The notes below the pieces were generated by a model. The model saw only the letters and a program-made list of their open reading frames with translations. It ran no database searches and had not been told where the DNA came from. Positions 43,186 through 63,404 of a stretch of 64,000 nt of DNA are shown here, piece after piece. The stretch spans positions 143,814-207,813 of the IMG/VR virus record IMGVR_UViG_3300042302_000394. One strand, given 5' to 3'. The position numbers and the translations under genes are program-made. The stretch's first letter is position 1. The number at the start of each line of letters is the position of its first letter.

Positions 43186-44421
43186 TTAATTTTTCCACCA
43201 CGGCAAATATTTTTCTGTATTGTGATTTCGATAAGCATCCATCTTTTTTATTATCGAAACACTGTTTTTAAAATTTATATCTGACTCAGGTGTTCCGATT
43301 AAAAATGTAATCATTGCACTCAATATGTTAGCCTTTTCTTTAACTGCATCTTTTTCAAGTAGTTCTCTATTGTTTTCAAACCAGGTTGCAATTTCTTGAT
43401 ACACTGTATTTTTATAAGCTGTTGGTAAATTACTCGGGGATGCATAGCTTGGATCGTAGATATAATTTATGTGAGGAAAGTTTAAAATATTCTTTCCTTC
43501 CAACCTCACAATATAATCTAACAATTCTGTAAATTTATGTGTATTAAAAATAGAAAACACAGTGTGAAACTCGATACCAATATTTTCGTTTTCATTCGAA
43601 TATTGAACTATGCTATCAATATTATCTTTAACAATGTTCCATTTTCCAGGATATCTAATATATTCGTACATATCAGCAACAGCATCAATACTTACTTTAA
43701 TAGTCATAGTCTTAAAATGGCTCCAGATGTCAAACCATTTTGACGGTGTCACAGTTAAATTTGTATGTATAGATAAGTCAACCTGTTTAGATAAACCTGA
43801 ACTAATTAGTTCTTTACAAAATGTATAAAAATCGTTGTTGATTAATGGTTCACCACCGGTTACTAATATCTGCACTAATCCGTCAGTCTTTACTAGGTCA
43901 AGGATATGTTTAATTTGATCATAGTTCCATTGAGCTTTATAATCACTTTCTTTTTCACCCCATGGTTTAATGTTGAGGAATTTAAATTCTTTTATTAGTT
44001 GATCGCTAGCTCCCGGGGTACACATCTTGCATTGTAGATTACACTTATTCGACCAACTTAAATCTAAGTAATTTACATCAACAGATTCTAACTTGCCCGT
44101 ATGCATTTCAGTGTTTGTTATAATATCTTCAATCGGCCATCTCTTTACAAACCAATTTCTAACACTTTCACCCCCATTGTCCTCAACATTATAACAATGC
44201 TGGCACTCGGCCACCCGCTCGCCGTCTATCATTTTCTTTCTTATATTTTTTAATTGATCAATATTGTAAAATTCAATCAAACTTGTTATCTCATTTATTT
44301 TTACAAACTTGCCATCTTTCTTTAATCTTCCTGCATTAGTAGAATTACAACAAAGACGCATATTGCCATCAGTGTGTGTAGAAAAATGATTCCATGCTAA
44401 CGGGCAATATGTCTTAGTCAT
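43186..44421 (-). CDS. Radical SAM protein with N-terminal SPASM/twitch-like Cys cluster
   Basis: CPLAW...CC...CQHCY; NKCNLQCKMC; TGGEP. Confidence 0.9.
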   Translation of the reverse strand: MTKTYCPLAWNHFSTHTDGNMRLCCNSTNAGRLKKDGKFVKINEITSLIEFYNIDQLKNIRKKMIDGERVAECQHCYNVEDNGGESVRNWFVKRWPIEDIITNTEMHTGKLESVDVNYLDLSWSNKCNLQCKMCTPGASDQLIKEFKFLNIKPWGEKESDYKAQWNYDQIKHILDLVKTDGLVQILVTGGEPLINNDFYTFCKELISSGLSKQVDLSIHTNLTVTPSKWFDIWSHFKTMTIKVSIDAVADMYEYIRYPGKWNIVKDNIDSIVQYSNENENIGIEFHTVFSIFNTHKFTELLDYIVRLEGKNILNFPHINYIYDPSYASPSNLPTAYKNTVYQEIATWFENNRELLEKDAVKEKANILSAMITFLIGTPESDINFKNSVSIIKKMDAYRNHNTEKYLPWWKN

Positions 44422-45763
44422 GTTTAAAAGCATCTTTCAAGTCTGGAATATAATCGCCGATTGAAATTCCTCTATGGTCATCAAGTATTTTAATTCTATG
44501 TTTGAATACCTTAAACAGTTTCGGATTGTCAGGCTTGGTTAATTCATTTAATAACAAGTGTATCTTTCCATCTAGTCCGGGAAAATCTTTAATGACTTGA
44601 CTATTTTCTAGATATGCTGTTAATCTCTGTGTAGCTAAATCTTTCAGAGACTGTGGTAACATTGATATTTGTTGTTCCATCGGAAACATAATTAAGTTGA
44701 TGTTATATGGCCACTCTTTAAAGTATGGATGCACTTTGGCCTGTTCTTCTATAAAATATAATAGGCTATCTAAGTTAACAATGTTCAATGAGCTAACGGT
44801 GATATTATTCAATATCTTAACATTGCTGTGTTTCATATAACTCTTTGCTTCAATGTAATTCTTTGATACCTGGCGCCATTTACTAGGATATCTAGCATAA
44901 TCGTTGACTTTATCAAACCCGTCAATACTGGCAATGAGTTCAAACTTTTTAAACTTAGGCATTAACTCTAAAAAGTTTTTATTTAGGTTTGTAAAGTTAC
45001 TGGACAAAAATACAGTAATATTTTTAGCATGATCATTGTCTACAACATATTGCAGTGCCTTTAACACAAATGGCATAATTGTAGGTTCACCACCGGCAAA
45101 ACTTAATACTTCTAGTCCAGGTGCTAATTTTGTAAAACTTTCCCATATTTCTTCATTATCAGACCAATCGGGATGTTCGACATCTTTCCATGTTTTATTA
45201 TGTTCAGTGATTCCAAACACACTGGAAATTTCAATAAATCTTCCATCTAATACTTTGATGCCACCAAATTTATTATTAAGTTCACCTAACTCTTTAGCAA
45301 TCTGACTACTGTCGTAACTGTTGCACATGACACATTTAAGGTTGCACAAATTACTAGGCTTTAATTCTAAATATGTTGGTTGGTGTAACACTTCGTAACT
45401 GTTGTTTATGCTGTTGGCAACTATCTCTAATGTTTTTCGATTATTTTTATAATCTTCAATTGACCGTGTACGCATACTAACGTCGCCGTCTCGAATGCAA
45501 CGCCTGCAAGCATCAGGAGTATCTCCTGTATGTAATTTTTTTCTTAAATCAACAAGGTGTTCGCTGTTCCACGCATCACTAAAATTATCCCCGGATAAAA
45601 TGCTAATGATATCTCCGTTCGGGTGTGTCATTGTTCCTACATAATTACAACACGGTTTAAGGTGGCCAGCGGGATTAGAACTTAGTTGTGTAAAAGGATA
45701 AAAACAAAATGTCTCACTTTCAATAATTTCTGTTCTTAATTGATCAATCTTGTCCATATTCAT
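44414..45763 (-). CDS. Radical SAM protein with N-terminal SPASM/twitch-like Cys cluster
   Basis: CFYPF...PCC...CRRC; NLCNLKCVMC; AGGEP. Confidence 0.9.
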   Translation of the reverse strand: MNMDKIDQLRTEIIESETFCFYPFTQLSSNPAGHLKPCCNYVGTMTHPNGDIISILSGDNFSDAWNSEHLVDLRKKLHTGDTPDACRRCIRDGDVSMRTRSIEDYKNNRKTLEIVANSINNSYEVLHQPTYLELKPSNLCNLKCVMCNSYDSSQIAKELGELNNKFGGIKVLDGRFIEISSVFGITEHNKTWKDVEHPDWSDNEEIWESFTKLAPGLEVLSFAGGEPTIMPFVLKALQYVVDNDHAKNITVFLSSNFTNLNKNFLELMPKFKKFELIASIDGFDKVNDYARYPSKWRQVSKNYIEAKSYMKHSNVKILNNITVSSLNIVNLDSLLYFIEEQAKVHPYFKEWPYNINLIMFPMEQQISMLPQSLKDLATQRLTAYLENSQVIKDFPGLDGKIHLLLNELTKPDNPKLFKVFKHRIKILDDHRGISIGDYIPDLKDAFKHD

Positions 45764-48689
45764 TATTCCTTGTTGCTTCTAACACTAATTTCATTTCTGG
45801 TATGATTTCATAAGTATTCTCACCTCTTAACTTATCCAATTGTTCCGTCACTGTTACAAATTTCTTTGCTGATGTTAAATCAAATGGTTTTTTTAATTCA
45901 TGTATGATATGTGTTAAAAGATGATCTATGCTTGTATTATATGTTTCGTTGTGCTCTTTGACAAAAGTTTCTAATTTAATTACAGTCTCTGCACGATAAT
46001 CATCGGGTAGAATACTAACATGATAATGTGAAGGATGTTCTAACAAATTGATGAAGAAATTATTGTAATTAATAAATTTGGTTTTAGGATGTTGACGTAT
46101 AACTCCTATTGAAATCAAATGTTTAATAATTTCAGGAAATCTGCCAACATTCCAAGCACCTACAGTAATACCCGGGCGTATGATAGCATTATCTAATGTC
46201 ATCAATTCTTTTAGATTTGACTCAACCTTAGACCATACAGTGCCGGCTCGAATGAGTTCTGCACGTTCTCCAACTTCATCGATACTGGGCCATATTTCTA
46301 ATTTGCCAAAGTTCCATCGCCGCCAGTAGTCAATAACATTTTTCTTATTATAAGATAACACTGATGCATTTGTGTTATATGATAGTTTAACATCAAATCG
46401 TTGTTTTTCTACCAACATTTCTAAAATTTGCCAGTGTTCAGGCATGAGTAGAGGTTCGCCTCCAGCAAAGTAAATTCTTTCCACATGGTTAATTTGATCT
46501 TTTAGAAAATCAAAGTTATTCTTATCATCTACTGATTCGATGCTCCATATTTTTTCTTGATCAGTGAGGCCTAATTTTTTAGCATCCGGCACCCATGCTG
46601 AACTGTAACGTGGTCCGCAACTACGACATTTAAAATTGCAAAGATTACTAAAACGGAAATCCCAATACTTCAACTCCATAGTAGTGCATGTTCCGTCTGC
46701 TAGTGTAATTTCTGGAATTTTTTTTACTACCTCTGGAAAGTCTCTATTGTGATAGAAACGACCACTTTCACCAGTGACCCGTTCTCTATCAAAACATTTA
46801 CGGCATATTTCGGGCTCTTTGCCCCCTATCATATCTTTTCTTAAAGATTTCATATTGCCGCTGTTCCAAATTTCTTCAATGCTCTGATGTGTTAGATCAC
46901 CAGCAAAATAATTATGTACAGAGGTTAGGCAACACGGAATTACTTTTCCACTAGGTTCAAATGCAAGATGCATCCAGGGCACTGCACATATTGTGGTTGT
47001 ATTTGTTGCAACTGCAACTACATCTTCTTTTTTGACAATTTTAATAGGTTTGTAATCGAAGGCAGTTATTTTTTTTGAGTTGAACATTGTGAGTAACCAG
47101 GACCTGTTATTTATTTGTTGTAATGTTGGTGTATTTTTATTTGCATCAAAGAACTCTTTAGCAGAATGTACAGCAGATAATGCATAATTACCGAACGGCC
47201 TATCTACTCCCAGAGTCTCCCATGCTGCCAATCTATCAATAGCTTCAGCATTATCGGGATCTTGTGCAATGGTATTGCATAACTTAATTGTTTCCCTAAA
47301 TGCACTTCGCCATGTGGCAAACTCGTCTGTGTTAAATGTTGTAATGTTACTGACTTTATCGAAGACTTTTAATTTAGGAACAATAGTCGTCAGTAGGTCT
47401 AATGTTTTCCAAACTTTGATTTTGCCAAATGCCCGCTTAGGGAATAATTTAACGCCACCGTAACCATATTCTAAATCATTAACAGGATTCTTACTGTGCC
47501 AGACGTATGTACAGTCTCTATCAAATATCTCTGGTTGGTAGTCGAACTGCCAGTCATCGACTAAGTAAGCATCACCGTCGACTACATAGAACATGTCAGT
47601 CTTGGATAACTTAGCCGCTGCCTTATGTGCCTCAAAGATACCAGTAACACCATCCACACGTTTGGCATGTGGTGCTTTTTCTAAAACACGCTGCCAATTC
47701 TCTTCTGCATTAGATTCATGGTAACTAATAAAGATTACATCCAGTGTTTCGGCAATCAGAGGAGTAACTGTTCCTATTTCTTTAACACCCACAATCTCTG
47801 CACTGGGAGTAATTTTCAAAGCCCAAATCTTCTCCCCGTTTATTTCTTTGTCTAGATACCATATATGTTCATAGGCTAGATCGTGCCAAGGAATGTCGTA
47901 ATCTAAATCAAAACGCATTTCTGGTAGGCTAGGATTTTGTTCAATTTTAAACTCAGGACTAACTGTGCCTAACCATTCCCATTTAGAAGTTTTTTTACGT
48001 TTAGGTTCAAACTTAATCAACCAAGTACCTGGTTTTGGACTGTAGTTAGGATCCAGCTCAAGTGCAGTAACGTAATCCAGAAACCAAAATGGCGGATAAC
48101 ATTCGTTGACATCGATGAGTAGTTTAGGAAGATCAGGATTCCATGTAACTCGCATTTCAGGCATAACGTATCCCATGTCTTTCTCGCCTTTAACGTTGGC
48201 GCCAGGCACCTCACAAGTAAATGCCCATATTTTATCTTCTAAAGGATTGACTCTAGGATCAATGTACCAAACTAACGTATAGTCAGCATCGTCTTGATTA
48301 TATACATAACTTTCTATAGGATTAAATTCAAATGTAATAGAACTTGCTATTGCAGAATTCTTTTTCCAGATAGGCGTTTTTGCCCACATGTGATTCTTTG
48401 GTACTTCTATTTCATGTGTTTCATATCCAGCATATGGGTGCCACCCATCTTTAAACAGTTTGGCTACCCACTCACCTTTGTATGTCCAAACTAGACATTT
48501 TCTTGTTTTAGGCACATCATTTACAAAGTTCAAGACACTAGAATGTCTTGCATAAGGATTTATCACTAAGAATTCAGTATCGCCTTCACCTAAGTTGTAT
48601 AATTGTTGGTCATAATAAAACTCATCCCCTCCCCAGGGGATTTCTTTGATTAGGTCTGTATTGATTTTGGGGTATTGATCTAGAAGCAT
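45744..48689 (-). CDS. Fusion of aromatic-rich repeats, a glycosyltransferase-like (DxD) domain and a twitch radical SAM domain
   Basis: DVIFISY.E..AEENW...AHKAAA...YVVDGD...YGYGGVKL; then CAVPW...PCC...CRKC, NLCNFKCRSC, AGGEP. Confidence 0.85.
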   Translation of the reverse strand: MLLDQYPKINTDLIKEIPWGGDEFYYDQQLYNLGEGDTEFLVINPYARHSSVLNFVNDVPKTRKCLVWTYKGEWVAKLFKDGWHPYAGYETHEIEVPKNHMWAKTPIWKKNSAIASSITFEFNPIESYVYNQDDADYTLVWYIDPRVNPLEDKIWAFTCEVPGANVKGEKDMGYVMPEMRVTWNPDLPKLLIDVNECYPPFWFLDYVTALELDPNYSPKPGTWLIKFEPKRKKTSKWEWLGTVSPEFKIEQNPSLPEMRFDLDYDIPWHDLAYEHIWYLDKEINGEKIWALKITPSAEIVGVKEIGTVTPLIAETLDVIFISYHESNAEENWQRVLEKAPHAKRVDGVTGIFEAHKAAAKLSKTDMFYVVDGDAYLVDDWQFDYQPEIFDRDCTYVWHSKNPVNDLEYGYGGVKLFPKRAFGKIKVWKTLDLLTTIVPKLKVFDKVSNITTFNTDEFATWRSAFRETIKLCNTIAQDPDNAEAIDRLAAWETLGVDRPFGNYALSAVHSAKEFFDANKNTPTLQQINNRSWLLTMFNSKKITAFDYKPIKIVKKEDVVAVATNTTTICAVPWMHLAFEPSGKVIPCCLTSVHNYFAGDLTHQSIEEIWNSGNMKSLRKDMIGGKEPEICRKCFDRERVTGESGRFYHNRDFPEVVKKIPEITLADGTCTTMELKYWDFRFSNLCNFKCRSCGPRYSSAWVPDAKKLGLTDQEKIWSIESVDDKNNFDFLKDQINHVERIYFAGGEPLLMPEHWQILEMLVEKQRFDVKLSYNTNASVLSYNKKNVIDYWRRWNFGKLEIWPSIDEVGERAELIRAGTVWSKVESNLKELMTLDNAIIRPGITVGAWNVGRFPEIIKHLISIGVIRQHPKTKFINYNNFFINLLEHPSHYHVSILPDDYRAETVIKLETFVKEHNETYNTSIDHLLTHIIHELKKPFDLTSAKKFVTVTEQLDKLRGENTYEIIPEMKLVLEATRNNEYGQD

Positions 48690-52771: not shown

Positions 52772-53503
52772 ATGACAGCAAAATCTCCACGTAGACCCAA
52801 ACTGGGCATAGTACAATCAAGAGGTCTAGGCGACATAGTGATAGCTCTGCCCATAGCTAAATTTTATCACGATCAAGGCTGGGATATTCTGTGGCCCATA
52901 TGTACAGAATTCATCTCGCACTTTGAACACACAGTACCCTGGATCAAATGGATTCCAGTGCAGACAGACCCGGGCAGTTTCTTCTACGACCAACCCATGA
53001 AGGCCCTGAAGAACTTTCATTGTGACGAGATCATCCCCCTGTATCAAGCACTGACGGGCCATAAATTCCACGAAGAACTGTACTTTCAACAGACCAAGTT
53101 TGATCAATACAAGTACATCAAAGCGGGCGTACCATTCTTAAACAAGTGGAAACTTAGCGAGTGTATTCAGCGTGATGCACAAAGAGAACAACGTCTATAT
53201 GACAAGATCATTACCAATGAAAAATACGCAGTAGTACATCTAGAAGGCAGCGATCACACGGCCAACTTCGATCCCAGTATAATACCCAGCGACTGGCAAA
53301 CAGTGTATATCAAAGCGGAAACTGACAGCATCTTCGACTGGCTAAAGATCATAGAAGGCGCAGAAAGTCTAGTAATGGTCGACAGTGTGTATAGTAATCT
53401 AGTTGATCAATTAAAGATCAAAACGGACAAATACTTTATACCAAGAAGTCATGTGGGACTAACACCTGTACACGGTATGGACTGGACATGGATTAAGTTC
53501 TAA
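52772..53503 (+). CDS. GT9-like glycosyltransferase
   Basis: RGLGDIVIALPIA...IFDWLKIIEGA...MVDS; start moved to ATG 52772. Confidence 0.7.
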   Translation: MTAKSPRRPKLGIVQSRGLGDIVIALPIAKFYHDQGWDILWPICTEFISHFEHTVPWIKWIPVQTDPGSFFYDQPMKALKNFHCDEIIPLYQALTGHKFHEELYFQQTKFDQYKYIKAGVPFLNKWKLSECIQRDAQREQRLYDKIITNEKYAVVHLEGSDHTANFDPSIIPSDWQTVYIKAETDSIFDWLKIIEGAESLVMVDSVYSNLVDQLKIKTDKYFIPRSHVGLTPVHGMDWTWIKF

Positions 53504-53523
53504 ACACACAGTATATATACACT

Positions 53524-53664
53524 ACACTGTATACACCCAAATACCCCGCTACAGCCTAATACGTTATAGCGGGATTCTTATATATACACATAGTCAAATA
53601 CCCCGCTGTAGGTCTATTGGGGATTAGTCATACAGCGTATATACACATAGTCAAATACCCCGCT
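53524..53664 (+). repeat. Three direct repeats with a 57-bp period
   Basis: CAAATACCCCGCT at 53538, 53595 and 53652; exact 27-mer TATATACACATAGTCAAATACCCCGCT at 53581-53607 and 53638-53664. Confidence 0.9.
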
Positions 53665-53924
53665 ATAAGAGGCCCCTCACACAGTAAAGAGAACTCAAAC
53701 TTCTACAATGATTGGCGGTGGGAGAACCTGAGAGAACCTGAGGAAGAACGGTGAAAACCATTTTACGATAACCTCTCTTCACCATGGCCCCACCACAGCC
53801 CGCACCCTAGAAATCACGGTGAATCCACAGCCAAACCACAGCATCTTATGCTGGAAAAGTGGCATTTTCGCCACAGAAATGCTGGAAATACACCGGTTAT
53901 TAGCAGGGTTTTTCAGCCCCACAG

Positions 53925-53953
53925 TTGCCCAAACTAGCTAATGATGTTATACT
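53925..53953 (+). promoter_or_regulatory. Sigma70-type promoter with no downstream ORF
   Basis: TTGCCC-17nt-TATACT with extended -10 TG. Confidence 0.6.
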
Positions 53954-53959
53954 ATACGC

Positions 53960-54270
53960 ATACAGTAGAGAAAACCGTAACTGTATAGGTAGTGTATGAG
54001 CTTAACCACAGTCGCTTACCGGATGGGAGTGGGGACCAAGTACATGAGCAGAAGTCCTAGACCTGTGTACTATACAGTGAAAGACCGGCCGGAATGTGGT
54101 AAGCGGCAAAGTCTAGCTCATTGAGCAGGAACAAGGTCTGCGGGCCCGTATAATGACACTTGCGTATATACGGGATATATAATGACTATACTGGTATATT
54201 GGAGTATTATCTCACTATATACAGTATAGTCTATTATGTAGATAATCAATAACTGATTATCTGGATTATC
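53960..54270 (+). ncRNA. Candidate structured non-coding RNA A
   Basis: Promoter upstream, no ORF, nested stems ATGAGCT/AGCTCAT and GTCGCTTACC/GGTAAGCGGC, plus further hairpins. Confidence 0.5.
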
Positions 54271-54272
54271 TT

Positions 54273-54524
54273 TTAAACAAACTCAATATTATCTGTACGC
54301 ATAGTTTGTTTTGCAGTAGAGATAATACGCTCTTTATCTTTTTGTATAGTTTCCCAAACAAAATCTCCGCTAACAAAATCGCATTTAGCACGAGTGGGAA
54401 ACTTCCAAGCACCTTTATCTGTTTGTTCTGTAACATTAAAAGCGCAGATAATAGTATATACTTCTTTTTCTTTATTATATACAATTTTAGCTTTTGCAGT
54501 GTTTGCAGTGTATACTTTTGACAT
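54273..54524 (-). CDS. Hypothetical early protein in inverted orientation, AT-rich
   Basis: AAGGA RBS; TATAAT at 54551-54556 on the minus strand. Confidence 0.75.
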   Translation of the reverse strand: MSKVYTANTAKAKIVYNKEKEVYTIICAFNVTEQTDKGAWKFPTRAKCDFVSGDFVWETIQKDKERIISTAKQTMRTDNIEFV

Positions 54525-54651
54525 GTGCTTCCTTTGTTGTTTAAGTATGTATTATAGCATCTTTTGGAGTGCCTGTCTTGTTGTATTTTGAACACAGATC
54601 ATTTGGAGGGTCTTTGGTTGACTGATTGGTAAAACCTTGCTATAATACACT

Positions 54652-54990
54652 ATGACGACACAAACAGTAACCCGTAAGAAGCGTGTAGACCGCAATCATA
54701 TCATCTATGAGCTTGTGGTCAACGGCAAGAACTACATTGGCGTCACAGCTAAGACAGAGAGCACTGTGAACAAGAGTGTTTTGAGTCGTGCCGCTAAACA
54801 CTTCTATCGTGCCAAGACTGAGACTAAGAACTGGCTGCTCTGTGCTGAGTTGCGCACACTGAGCGACAAGAGCGAGATTGAAGTATACGTGCATGAAGTT
54901 ATACGAGGCAAGGCAGAAGCCCACAAGCGTGAAGTAGAGATCCGCAGAATGGTTAAGCCTGTTTTAAATACAGACGTTCGTGGGGACTAA
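54652..54990 (+). CDS. GIY-YIG nuclease-superfamily protein
   Basis: HIIY...NYIGVT...R...H...E...KPVLN; ATG only 5 nt after TATAAT. Confidence 0.7.
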   Translation: MTTQTVTRKKRVDRNHIIYELVVNGKNYIGVTAKTESTVNKSVLSRAAKHFYRAKTETKNWLLCAELRTLSDKSEIEVYVHEVIRGKAEAHKREVEIRRMVKPVLNTDVRGD

Positions 54991-63329: not shown

Positions 63330-63404
63330 CTGGCCATAGTTCAATGGACAGAACATCTGCCTTCTAAGCAGTCAATCCAGGTTCGATTCCTGGTGGCCGG
63401 ACCA
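63330..63404 (+). tRNA. tRNA-Arg (anticodon TCT)
   Basis: Acceptor CTGGCCA/TGGCCGG, D arm GTTC/GAAC, anticodon loop CTTCTAA, T loop TTCGATT, encoded CCA. Confidence 0.95.

What the first reader, a model, noticed from the sequence alone, without database searches (positions are those of the whole stretch)
53925..54270. Candidate ncRNA A: promoter-driven, ORF-free, nested stems with possible pseudoknot
Seen: after TTGCCC-17-TATACT come a 5' hairpin ATACAGT/ACTGTAT, an outer stem ATGAGCT(53996)/AGCTCAT(54115) and an inner stem GTCGCTTACC(54011)/GGTAAGCGGC(54098). Inside are GGGAC(54032)/GTCCT(54054) crossed by AGTACAT(54039)/GTGTACT(54065), and a further complement CTAGAC(54057)/GTCTAG(54111). 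Hairpins CCCGTATA/TATACGGG, GACTATACTG/CAGTATAGTC and AGATAATCA/TGATTATCT follow. Inference: the first transcript of the early region is a structured RNA that I cannot assign to a known class.
Basis: partly seen in the sequence, partly recalled or inferred. Interest (0 to 1): 0.65.

Follow-up and report, generated by a model that had tools for sequence, protein, structure and literature searches.

The report
New structured RNA beside phage tRNAs
The flagged stretch encodes a real, about 210-base, intricately folded non-coding RNA that a group of uncultured lake phages makes next to their tRNA-Met gene; it matches no described RNA family and its job is unknown.

Summary
Forty-five distinct homologues from viral and metagenome contigs define a new RNA family, with its core at window 53972-54179 on the + strand. 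The fold has two domains closed by a 4-bp P1. A 3-bp pseudoknot links the conserved loop of the 3' hairpin to a junction.

Covariation is very strong: 97.8% of cells paired against 66.6% when shuffled, and a score of 0.824 against 0.217 shuffled and 0.08-0.11 when partners are slid. G-U pairs fix the + strand, and every reading frame carries stops.

In 40 of 45 members a tRNA gene ends 4-71 nt upstream: tRNA-Met(CAT) in 38, tRNA-Leu(TAA) after tRNA-Met in 2. All members examined end in a hairpin plus U-tract. It is therefore a stable RNA made with the phage tRNAs, not a leader of the early genes, which have their own conserved promoter.

There is no match in Rfam 15, GenBank phages or 185,579 prokaryote species. 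Expression is unproven. The closest analogues by context only are ROOL and GOLLD. The function is inferred, not shown.

The parts
53925..53953 (+). Candidate sigma70-type promoter of the window's copy: TTGCCC, 17-nt spacer, TG-n-TATACT (extended -10).
   Evidence: One search gives 9/12 matches with TG before the -10. In L026 the hexamers, spacing and TG are identical while 7 of 17 spacer bases differ. Its use is inferred, not shown. Most homologues have a tRNA gene here instead.
53972..54179 (+). Conserved core of the new RNA family (208 nt in the window, 202-225 nt in relatives).
   Evidence: Covariance model R1 scores 167.4 bits, E 2e-48, over the full model 1-214. It is a single copy in the 207.8-kb record.
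53975..53978 (+). P1 5' strand (CCGU). It pairs with GCGG at 54140-54143 and closes both domains.
   Evidence: helix 1: 96% paired. Pair 6:262 is CG 22, GC 20, UA 2.
53980..53988 (+). P2 5' strand (ACUGUAUAG). It pairs with CUAUACAGU at 54070-54078.
   Evidence: It forms in the constrained MFE of nearly all members. Cognate duplexes average -8.3 kcal/mol against -4.5 for non-cognate ones, and the cognate partner is in the best 10% in 36/45 members. More than 12 different complementary sequence pairs occur.
53992..53997 (+). P4 5' strand (GUGUAU). It pairs with GUACAU at 54040-54045, at the base of the P4-P3 arm.
   Evidence: Cognate duplexes average -6.8 against -3.7 kcal/mol for non-cognate ones, and many complementary variants occur. 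It forms in the constrained MFE.
54006..54032 (+). P3 hairpin: CCAC/GUGG (54006-09 with 54029-32), GUC/GAU (54011-13 with 54022-24), loop L3 at 54014-21, and the conserved GGGA bulge at 54025-28.
   Evidence: helices 2 and 3: 98% and 100% paired, with changes on both sides.
54015..54021 (+). Kissing-loop strand in L3 (CUUACCG). It pairs with 54097-54103 in L7.
   Evidence: helix 4: 7 pairs, 100% paired, all with changes on both sides. The duplex is 8-9 bp in every member, at -11.8 kcal/mol cognate against -4.7 non-cognate.
54046..54048 (+). Junction J4/5 (GAG of the conserved UGAG).
   Evidence: Nearly invariant columns in A3 and A4.
54049..54065 (+). P5 arm: CAG/CUG (54049-51 with 54063-65) around GUC-CUA-GAC (54054-62), with U-A invariant in the loop.
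   Evidence: helix 5: 98.5% paired. Pair 145:151 is UA 24, AU 16. The outer three pairs were seen.
54079..54081 (+). GAA linker between domain I and domain II (the two A are invariant).
   Evidence: Invariant columns A109 and A110.
54082..54139 (+). Domain II. P6 is AGACC 54082-86 with GGUCU 54135-39. P7 is GCCG 54088-91 with CGGC 54104-07, with loop L7. J7/8 is 54108-15. P8 is GCUC 54116-19 with GAGC 54123-26. J8/6 is AGGAACAA at 54127-34 (AGGAA invariant).
   Evidence: helices 6, 7 and 9: 100%, 98% and 93% paired, and nearly every pair shows changes on both sides.
54109..54111 (+). Pseudoknot strand AAG in J7/8. It pairs with CUU at 54159-54161 in loop L9.
   Evidence: helix 8: 100% paired. 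Pair 207:282 is AU 23, GC 22. Pair 206:283 is AU 43, GC 2.
54145..54174 (+). P9 hairpin (10 bp with one bulge) carrying the conserved 9-nt loop GACACUUGC at 54155-63.
   Evidence: helix 10: 95% paired, with all 10 pairs changed on both sides. The loop consensus is G-A-n-A-C-Y-U-G-C.
54176..54240 (+). Long AT-rich hairpin at the place where the family's intrinsic terminator sits. In this copy its U-tract has decayed.
   Evidence: -24.9 kcal/mol, z -5.2. The stems are kept in L024 while the loop diverges. Relatives have a hairpin plus U-tract at this place.
54241..54275 (+). Second hairpin, AGAUAAUCA/UGAUUAUCU, followed by GGAUUAUCUUUU. This is the likely 3' end of the window's transcript.
   Evidence: -10.6 kcal/mol, z -3.95. 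The consensus scan did not call it a terminator because the stem has few G-C pairs.

Best explanation
Window 53972-54179 (+) encodes a member of a previously undescribed family of stable, highly structured non-coding RNAs. The family is carried by a clade of uncultured freshwater myoviruses; the baseplate and tail-fibre proteins in the window are T4-like.

Shown:
- The RNA folds into two multi-helix domains closed by P1. Domain I is P2, the P4-P3 arm and P5. Domain II is P6, P7 and P8.
- Loop L3 of domain I and loop L7 of domain II form an 8-9-bp kissing helix.
- A conserved 9-nt loop on the 3' hairpin P9 pairs with junction J7/8.
- About 30 junction and loop nucleotides are invariant.

Shown by gene order:
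- The RNA occupies the phage's 'tRNA slot' just upstream of the early-gene block.
- In most members it lies 4-71 nt behind tRNA-Met(CAT).
- It is always followed by a hairpin plus U-tract.

Inferred:
- It is transcribed together with the tRNA, freed by tRNA 3'-end processing, and ends at its own terminator. In the window's copy the tRNA is absent and an extended -10 promoter at 53925-53953 is the likely driver.
- It acts in trans as a self-contained folded RNA particle. That means it acts through its three-dimensional shape (binding a host or phage factor, a small ligand, or copies of itself), not by antisense pairing and not as a leader that controls the gene downstream.

Its actual target is unknown.
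For: - Family and structure. Iterative nhmmer and covariance model R1 recover 45 distinct members from viral and metagenome contigs.
- Covariation. On the model alignment, 47 pairs in 10 helices are 97.8% paired against 66.6% in shuffles. The covariation score is 0.824 against 0.217 shuffled (0/500 reach it) and 0.08-0.11 when partners are slid by 1-3 columns.
- P2, P4 and the kissing loop. Cognate-versus-non-cognate duplex energies support all three.
- Strand. There are 223 G-U/U-G cells against 69 A-C/C-A cells.
- Non-coding. Stops occur in all three + frames in 45/45 members, and indels break the window's 42-aa ORF in L026.
- tRNA linkage. In 40/45 members a same-strand tRNA ends 4-71 nt upstream, and in 13 the spacer is 10 nt or less, which leaves no room for a promoter.
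- Terminators. Their sequences are unrelated between members, but a hairpin plus U-tract always follows directly after the ACUGA tail.
- Not a leader. The next + gene has its own strongly conserved promoter downstream of that terminator, and in many members a gene on the opposite strand lies in between.
- Accessory nature. Relatives without the RNA carry tRNA-Leu(TAA) and tRNA-Arg(TCT) in the same slot.
Against: - No transcript has been seen. Only lake-water DNA metagenomes hold the sequence, and the two possible RNA runs gave contigs of relatives over genes as well, which proves nothing.
- The window's copy is atypical. It has no tRNA upstream, its tail reads AUAUA instead of ACUGA, and its terminator is weak. 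It could therefore be less active or differently expressed.
- No partner protein, ligand or target can be named. The neighbouring 83-aa gene is enriched beside the RNA but is not exclusive to it.
- The alignment used for counting was fitted to the model, which favours the structure. However, the unfitted MAFFT alignment also gives 0.613 against 0.199.
Confidence: 0.72

Rival explanations
1. A riboswitch-like or attenuator leader. The fold would be an aptamer whose state decides whether transcription from the upstream (tRNA) promoter stops at the terminator or reads on into the early genes.
For: - The architecture is aptamer-like: a closing P1, conserved junction nucleotides, a kissing loop and a pseudoknot, followed at once by an intrinsic terminator.
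- In some members (L031, L054, L071, L098) the RNA ends only about 110-190 nt before the 112-aa early gene, with nothing between.
Against: - The early gene has its own highly conserved TTGACA-N4-TGGTAAAACCtTGcTATAAT promoter after the terminator.
- In most RNA-bearing loci an opposite-strand 83-aa gene lies in between.
- Terminator stems differ completely between members (GGGAUAAUG.., AAACCCUA.., GGGGCUUCGGCCCC). I saw no conserved alternative pairing with P1 or P9 by eye, but this was not tested systematically.
- No Rfam riboswitch model matches at E up to 10.
Confidence: 0.1
2. A ribozyme, for instance one that cuts itself out of the tRNA-RNA precursor or acts on tRNAs.
For: - The RNA has a compact, pseudoknotted fold with invariant unpaired nucleotides (AAA, UGAG, GAA, AGGAA, GGG, ACUG), as in catalytic cores.
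- It is fused to a tRNA by as little as 4 nt, so some cleavage must define its 5' end.
Against: - Host RNase E, RNase Z or exonucleases can account for the processing.
- There is no similarity to any ribozyme family in Rfam, including RNase P, group I and II introns, glmS and the small self-cleavers.
- The helix order does not fit the RNase P or group I topology. That comparison rests on my own knowledge, not on a tool.
- The window's copy has no tRNA to be cut from.
Confidence: 0.1
3. A self-assembling RNA. The L3-L7 'kissing' helix would form between molecules, building dimers, rings or cages, as found for ROOL and GOLLD.
For: - Covariation cannot tell pairing within a molecule from pairing between copies.
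- In ROOL, a kissing loop first predicted as tertiary from covariation proved to be quaternary. ROOL and GOLLD are phage RNAs 'often near tRNA islands', and GOLLD env-38 lies downstream of a Met-tRNA (bioRxiv 10.1101/2024.12.08.627333).
- All 8 nucleotides of L3 are used in the helix.
Against: - The RNA is only about 210 nt, against 580-800 nt for ROOL and GOLLD.
- L3 and L7 sit in two domains joined by a 3-nt linker, a layout equally suited to docking within one molecule.
- No data bear on oligomeric state.
Confidence: 0.12
4. DNA-level sites (replication origin, operators, packaging signals) rather than an RNA. The palindromes would bind proteins or form cruciforms.
For: - The surrounding 770-nt intergenic region has 57-nt direct repeats and a run of six CCACAG words.
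- Homologous regions carry DnaA-box-like TTATCCACA arrays.
- The - strand folds at least as well as the + strand.
Against: - Compensatory changes keep long-range, non-palindromic pairings such as L3-L7, P1, P2 and P6.
- G-U pairs outnumber A-C by 223 to 69, so only the + strand transcript keeps the pairs.
- Helix sequences vary freely while pairing is kept, the opposite of a protein-binding word.
Confidence: 0.03
5. A small protein gene (the 42-aa ORF 53996-54124), or a decayed tRNA or tmRNA.
For: - An ATG-started 42-codon frame exists in the window.
- The slot holds tRNAs in relatives.
Against: - The ATG is absent in most members, indels shift the frame in L026, and all + frames carry stops in 45/45 members.
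- ARAGORN and the Rfam tRNA and tmRNA models find nothing in the RNA itself.
Confidence: 0.01

Closest known systems
ROOL (RF03087) and GOLLD (RF02032): ornate RNAs of phages and prophages
   Same: - The genomic setting is the same. They are phage-encoded, 'often near tRNA islands', and GOLLD env-38 lies downstream of a Met-tRNA.
- They also have elaborate covariation-supported folds with kissing loops and pseudoknots.
- They have no partner protein and no known function.
   Different: - Neither model matches the window or the whole 207.8-kb record at E up to 1.
- This RNA is about 210 nt, against about 580 and more than 800 nt.
- Its helix layout is its own.
- Multimer formation is untested here.
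Phage T4 stable RNAs C and D (rnaC, rnaD) in the T4 tRNA gene cluster (from my own knowledge; no paper retrieved)
   Same: They are small stable RNAs of unknown function, encoded among the tRNA genes of a T4-type phage and matured from tRNA-containing precursors.
   Different: No sequence comparison was possible with these tools. No GenBank phage, T4 included, matches the family by blastn. Homology is therefore neither shown nor likely.
Cobalamin riboswitch (RF00174 and variants)
   Same: - It also uses a kissing loop between a core hairpin and a 3' hairpin.
- The words AGGAA and GAGACCUGCC recall the B12 box. This is a resemblance recalled from memory.
   Different: - The order of the conserved words differs.
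- No Rfam cobalamin model matches at E up to 10 in a 1.3-kb search.
- There is no regulated downstream gene.
phi29 pRNA
   Same: It is a phage-encoded structured RNA that works through loop-loop pairing, in that case between copies.
   Different: It has a different size, fold and genomic position, and it comes from a podovirus with a packaging motor. It is in Rfam and did not match.

Membership tests
Any Rfam 15 family (4227 models) | The covariance-model score reaches the family's gathering threshold. | tested here: not met
   In the whole window at gathering thresholds, only tRNA 63330-63401 matches. In 53400-54700 at E up to 10 there are only sub-threshold miRNA and ROSE noise hits. In seven other family members, only the adjacent tRNAs match.
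GOLLD / ROOL | Match to RF02032 or RF03087. | tested here: not met
   There is no match at E up to 1 in the 207.8-kb record. The control genomes did not ring for ROOL, so that negative is weak on its own. The full Rfam scans agree with it.
GOLLD / ROOL | Phage-borne, next to tRNA genes. | tested here: met
   In 40/45 members a tRNA ends 4-71 nt upstream. The contigs are viral, with T4-like structural genes.
GOLLD / ROOL | RNA-only homo-oligomeric cage. | not testable with these tools
   This needs native gels or cryo-EM.
tRNA / tmRNA | Cloverleaf or tRNA-like domain recognised by ARAGORN or RF00005/RF00023. | tested here: not met
   ARAGORN finds only the neighbouring tRNAs. Rfam agrees.
Riboswitch (generic) | Sits in the leader of the gene it controls, with an expression platform that offers alternative pairings. 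| tested here: not met
   The downstream gene has its own promoter after the terminator. An opposite-strand gene often intervenes. I saw no conserved alternative pairing by eye.
Riboswitch (generic) | Binds a small ligand. | not testable with these tools
   This needs in-line probing or ITC.
Intrinsic (rho-independent) terminator | G+C-rich hairpin followed by a U-tract. | tested here: met
   It is met in the family (for example L030 at -19.4 kcal/mol followed by UAUUAUCUUU). In the window itself it is weak: the stems are AT-rich and the consensus scan finds none. The two hairpins fold at -24.9 and -10.6 kcal/mol, and the second is followed by UUAUCUUUU.
Sigma70-type promoter (for the window's copy) | -35 and -10 hexamers at 16-18 nt spacing, conserved in relatives. 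| tested here: inconclusive
   The match is 9/12 with an extended -10 TG. It is conserved in the one close relative that shares this arrangement. It differs from the phage's early-promoter word. No 5' end has been mapped.

The most novel reading that the evidence does not exclude
This may be a new class of functional RNA whose activity lies in the fold itself. It could be a natural ribozyme or ligand sensor released from a phage tRNA precursor. It could instead be a miniature self-assembling RNA particle held together by the L3-L7 loop pairing, a small cousin in kind (not in descent) of the ROOL and GOLLD cages.
Probability: 0.3. Interest if true: 0.85.

Novelty: new variant of a known kind. 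Interest (0 to 1): 0.68.

Why it matters
Ornate RNAs beside phage tRNA genes (GOLLD, ROOL) are a long-standing puzzle. They are widespread and beautifully folded, and cryo-EM has now shown that they form cages, yet they have no known function.

This family is a third, independent and much smaller example of the same genomic habit. At about 210 nt it has a fully specified secondary structure, a long kissing loop and a pseudoknot. That size is easy to synthesise, probe, crystallise or image, and easy to test for cleavage, ligand binding or multimerisation.

Related phages either carry it or carry extra tRNAs in the same slot. Natural presence/absence pairs therefore exist for comparison. If a function is found, it may show why phages place such RNAs in their tRNA operons.

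Tried and rejected
- Rfam at gathering and at permissive thresholds, on the window and on seven relatives: nothing.
- blastn of the region and of two divergent members against 50,697 GenBank phage records: no match.
- Pattern scan of one genome per prokaryote species: 101 pattern hits. The 80 returned as loci were rescored with the model and none is a member; the best is 19.7 bits in a Flagellimonas MAG, which is expected because the pattern itself gives part of the score.
- Expression. Sequencing-run search plus laying of contigs from two runs labelled RNA: inconclusive. The contigs belong to relatives and also cover genes, so this is no evidence for or against transcription.
- A partner protein. 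The opposite-strand 83-aa gene is enriched beside the RNA, at 45 of 65 loci against 5 of 30, but it is not exclusive and the loci are not independent. Pfam gives nothing for the four neighbouring proteins even at E 5.
- A phage-specific promoter word (GTGTATATAGAGT) between tRNA and RNA: not enriched in the window.
- A single-register alignment of P2: it failed because subfamilies carry bulges at different places. I replaced it with duplex-energy tests.
- RNase P, group I intron, T-box, cobalamin riboswitch and a pair of decayed tRNAs: each was rejected on helix order or lack of a model match. The topological comparisons rest on my own knowledge.
- A possible pairing of the conserved NUGAG with the CAU anticodon loop of the neighbouring tRNA: noticed, but left as untested speculation.
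- RF01998, searched in error, is a group II intron piece and not GOLLD.
- Literature searches found no description of this RNA.

Full report
**Setting**

The window is the last 64 kb of a 207.8-kb IMG/VR virus record that CheckV rates 58% complete. The left 51 kb carries - strand structural genes: T4-like baseplate-wedge and tail-fibre proteins, many with collagen repeats, plus a DNA ligase and three radical-SAM genes. The best cultured relatives of one virion protein are T4-like Synechococcus myoviruses, at 46% identity.

From 54618 onward the + strand carries small genes. Seven of them are preceded by an almost invariant promoter word, TTGACA-N4-TGGTAAAACCtTGcTATAAT. This is clearly the early block.

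The finding lies in the 770-nt gap (53504-54272) between a + ORF ending at 53503 and a - strand 83-aa ORF at 54273-54524.

**Checking the observation**

Energy alone is not persuasive:
- The 316-nt stretch folds better than shuffles on both strands, with z -3.6 and -5.65.
- The central 136 nt do not, with z -1.28.

The question therefore had to be settled by comparison with relatives.

**Homologues**

The downstream 112-aa protein is encoded on 273 viral contigs. Iterative nhmmer over the fetched loci found the region conserved on the + strand upstream of that gene. A DNA pattern taken from the most conserved 3' part then retrieved 34 viral loci. The same pattern, slightly widened, retrieved 80 metagenome loci, of which 30 are true members.

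A covariance model (R1) aligns 57 sequences, 45 of them distinct. It finds one copy in the whole virus record.

The nearest relative (L024/L026) is 77% identical over the whole intergenic region, but far more conserved across 53996-54270 than upstream. Indels there shift the window's 42-codon frame. All three + frames carry stops in 45/45 members. The element is not a protein gene.

**Structure**

RNAalifold on 19 sequences already gave 41 pairs, 32 of them with compensatory changes. My curated model, in window coordinates, is:

| Element | Coordinates and sequence |
|---|---|
| P1 | 53975-78 with 54140-43 |
| P2 | 53980-88 with 54070-78 |
| P4 | 53992-97 with 54040-45 |
| P3a | 54006-09 with 54029-32 |
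| P3b | 54011-13 with 54022-24, closing loop L3 |
| P5 | 54049-51 with 54063-65, and 54054-56 with 54060-62 |
| Linker | GAA 54079-81 |
| P6 | 54082-86 with 54135-39 |
| P7 | 54088-91 with 54104-07, closing loop L7 |
| P8 | 54116-19 with 54123-26 |
| P9 | 54145-54 with 54164-74, with loop GACACUUGC |
| Kissing helix (L3-L7) | 54015-21 with 54097-54103, extending to 8-9 bp |
| Pseudoknot | AAG 54109-11 in junction J7/8 with CUU 54159-61 in loop L9 |

The evidence for this model is as follows.
- On the unfitted MAFFT alignment of 27 sequences, the whole model scores 0.613 in covariation. Shuffles give 0.199 and slid partners give 0.09-0.14.
- On the 45-sequence model alignment, counting the ten helices that align in one register, 97.8% of cells are paired against 66.6% in shuffles. 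The score is 0.824 against 0.217, with 0/500 shuffles reaching it, and 0.08-0.11 when slid.
- The kissing helix, P6 and the pseudoknot are 100% paired. In the pseudoknot, one pair is A-U in 23 sequences and G-C in 22.
- P2 and P4 carry bulges at different places in different subfamilies, so they cannot be counted in one register. They nevertheless form in constrained minimum-energy folds of nearly all members.
- Each sequence's own two strands pair far better than strands taken from other members. The means are P2 -8.3 against -4.5, P4 -6.8 against -3.7, and the kissing loop -11.8 against -4.7 kcal/mol.
- G-U pairs outnumber A-C by 223 to 69, so the + strand is the RNA.

The 5' hairpin, the outer stem and the three crossing stems inside do not.

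**Context that changes the picture**

Printing the flanks of every member showed a tRNA gene directly upstream. ARAGORN finds a same-strand tRNA ending 4-71 nt before the RNA in 40 of 45 distinct members. In 38 it is tRNA-Met(CAT), and in 2 it is tRNA-Met followed by tRNA-Leu(TAA). In 13 members the spacer is 10 nt or less, so there the RNA cannot have a promoter of its own and must be cut from a tRNA-RNA precursor.

Each member examined is followed, right after a conserved ACUGA tail, by a hairpin plus U-tract whose sequence differs between subfamilies.

Relatives that lack the RNA carry tRNA-Met with tRNA-Leu(TAA) and tRNA-Arg(TCT) in the same slot, or tRNA-Met alone so close to the early gene that there is no room for the RNA. 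In two members (L054, L044) a copy of the early-promoter word sits just upstream of the tRNA-RNA unit.

The window's copy, like that of L024, is the exception:
- It has no tRNA upstream.
- Its tail reads AUAUA.
- The terminator hairpin has lost its U-tract and is followed by a second AT-rich hairpin with UUAUCUUUU.
- A candidate extended -10 promoter lies at 53925-53953. Its hexamers and spacing are conserved in L026 while the spacer diverges.

**What it is not**

- No Rfam 15 family matches the window or seven other members. GOLLD and ROOL are absent from the whole record.
- No GenBank phage matches.
- A pattern scan of one genome for each of 185,579 prokaryote species gave only chance hits among the 80 loci rescored.
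- It is not a leader of the early gene. That gene's own promoter follows the terminator, an opposite-strand gene often intervenes, and I saw no conserved alternative pairing between the fold and the very different terminators.
- It is not a DNA-level element. The pairings that are kept are long-range and non-palindromic, and they hold only in the + strand transcript.

**How it most likely works**

Shown: there is a conserved two-domain fold with a kissing loop, a pseudoknot and about 30 invariant unpaired nucleotides. It sits in the tRNA slot with its own terminator, and it is accessory, being present in some relatives and replaced by tRNAs in others.

Inferred: it is made with the tRNA, released by tRNA end-processing, and acts in trans through its shape. 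The helices vary freely in sequence, so antisense targeting through them is unlikely. Only the short conserved single strands could contact a partner.

I cannot say whether the partner is a protein, a small molecule, a tRNA or another copy of the RNA. My rough split of the trans-acting reading is:
- binding or decoy RNA: about 0.45;
- self-assembly through L3-L7: about 0.12;
- ribozyme: about 0.10.

The cis-regulator reading gets about 0.10. The precedent for the self-assembly reading is ROOL, where a covariation-predicted 'tertiary' kissing loop proved to join different chains. ROOL and GOLLD also share the tRNA-island setting, and GOLLD env-38 even lies downstream of a Met-tRNA.

**Limits**

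- No transcript evidence could be obtained. The only holders are lake-water DNA metagenomes, and the two runs labelled RNA were uninformative.
- The host is unknown.
- The model alignment is fitted to the structure, although the unfitted one agrees.
- Family members are related, so cell counts overstate the number of independent events. The number of distinct pair types per position (up to five) and the more than 12 different kissing-loop sequences argue for many events.
- 'No description' rests on Rfam 15 and four full-text searches.

**Verdict**

This is a real feature and a new RNA family. It is of the known kind 'ornate phage RNA beside tRNAs' but unrelated in sequence and fold to the known ones. 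Its function is open.

Noticed in passing
window 53524-53690: Three 57-nt direct repeats, each made of TATATACACATAGT, CAAATACCCCGCT and a small hairpin (CCCGCTA../..TAGCGGG). They look like iterons or tandem promoter-hairpin units. They are partly conserved in L008 and L026.
   Followed up: partly
window 53793-54011; L043, L098 and L235 just after the RNA terminator: Six CCACAG words, all on the + strand, lie within 220 nt. The last of them is inside the RNA. The homologous gaps of other phages carry arrays of TTATCCACA/TGTGGATAA, the DnaA-box word. The region may be a replication origin or an operator cluster.
   Followed up: partly
window 54618-54646, 55010, 55798, 57112, 59591, 60277, 62186 (+): Seven copies of a 29-nt early-promoter word, TTGACA-N4-TGGTAAAACCtTGcTATAAT (none expected by chance). 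It is also present many times in every related locus.
   Followed up: partly
window 54652-54990 (+): The first early gene encodes a 112-aa protein with a GIY-YIG-like motif (IIYELVVNGKNYIGVT; phrog_5123, E 7.7e-4, no Pfam hit). The 80 best of 273 matching viral contigs are 77-100% identical, while neighbouring proteins are only 45-65% identical. That is unusually strong conservation for a phage early gene.
   Followed up: partly
related loci L036, L042, L056, L058, L079, L089, L091 against L030 etc.: The slot upstream of the early block is a variable tRNA cassette. It holds tRNA-Met alone, tRNA-Met with tRNA-Leu(TAA) and tRNA-Arg(TCT) in any order, or tRNA-Met with the new RNA. In the window the only tRNA, Arg(TCT), sits 9 kb downstream at 63330-63404.
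   Followed up: yes
window 43186-48689 (-): Three consecutive radical-SAM proteins, one of 981 aa with a SPASM domain. This suggests a peptide- or nucleotide-modification cluster in the phage.
   Followed up: no
L236:108-325: One family member carries an insertion of about 33 nt inside loop L3, yet keeps the strand that pairs with L7.
   Followed up: no
L019:3060-3400: One relative has an inverted extra copy of the 112-aa gene with its promoter word, in place of the tRNA/RNA slot.
   Followed up: no
window 54045-54048 and family column 'NUGAG': The conserved junction UGAG, preceded by a variable base, is complementary to the CUCAU of the neighbouring tRNA-Met(CAT) anticodon loop. This may be chance and was not tested.
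   Followed up: no
window 54273-54524 (-): An 83-aa ORF converges on the RNA's 3' end. It occurs beside the RNA in 45 of 65 RNA-bearing loci, against 5 of 30 loci without the RNA. It has no family match.
   Followed up: partly
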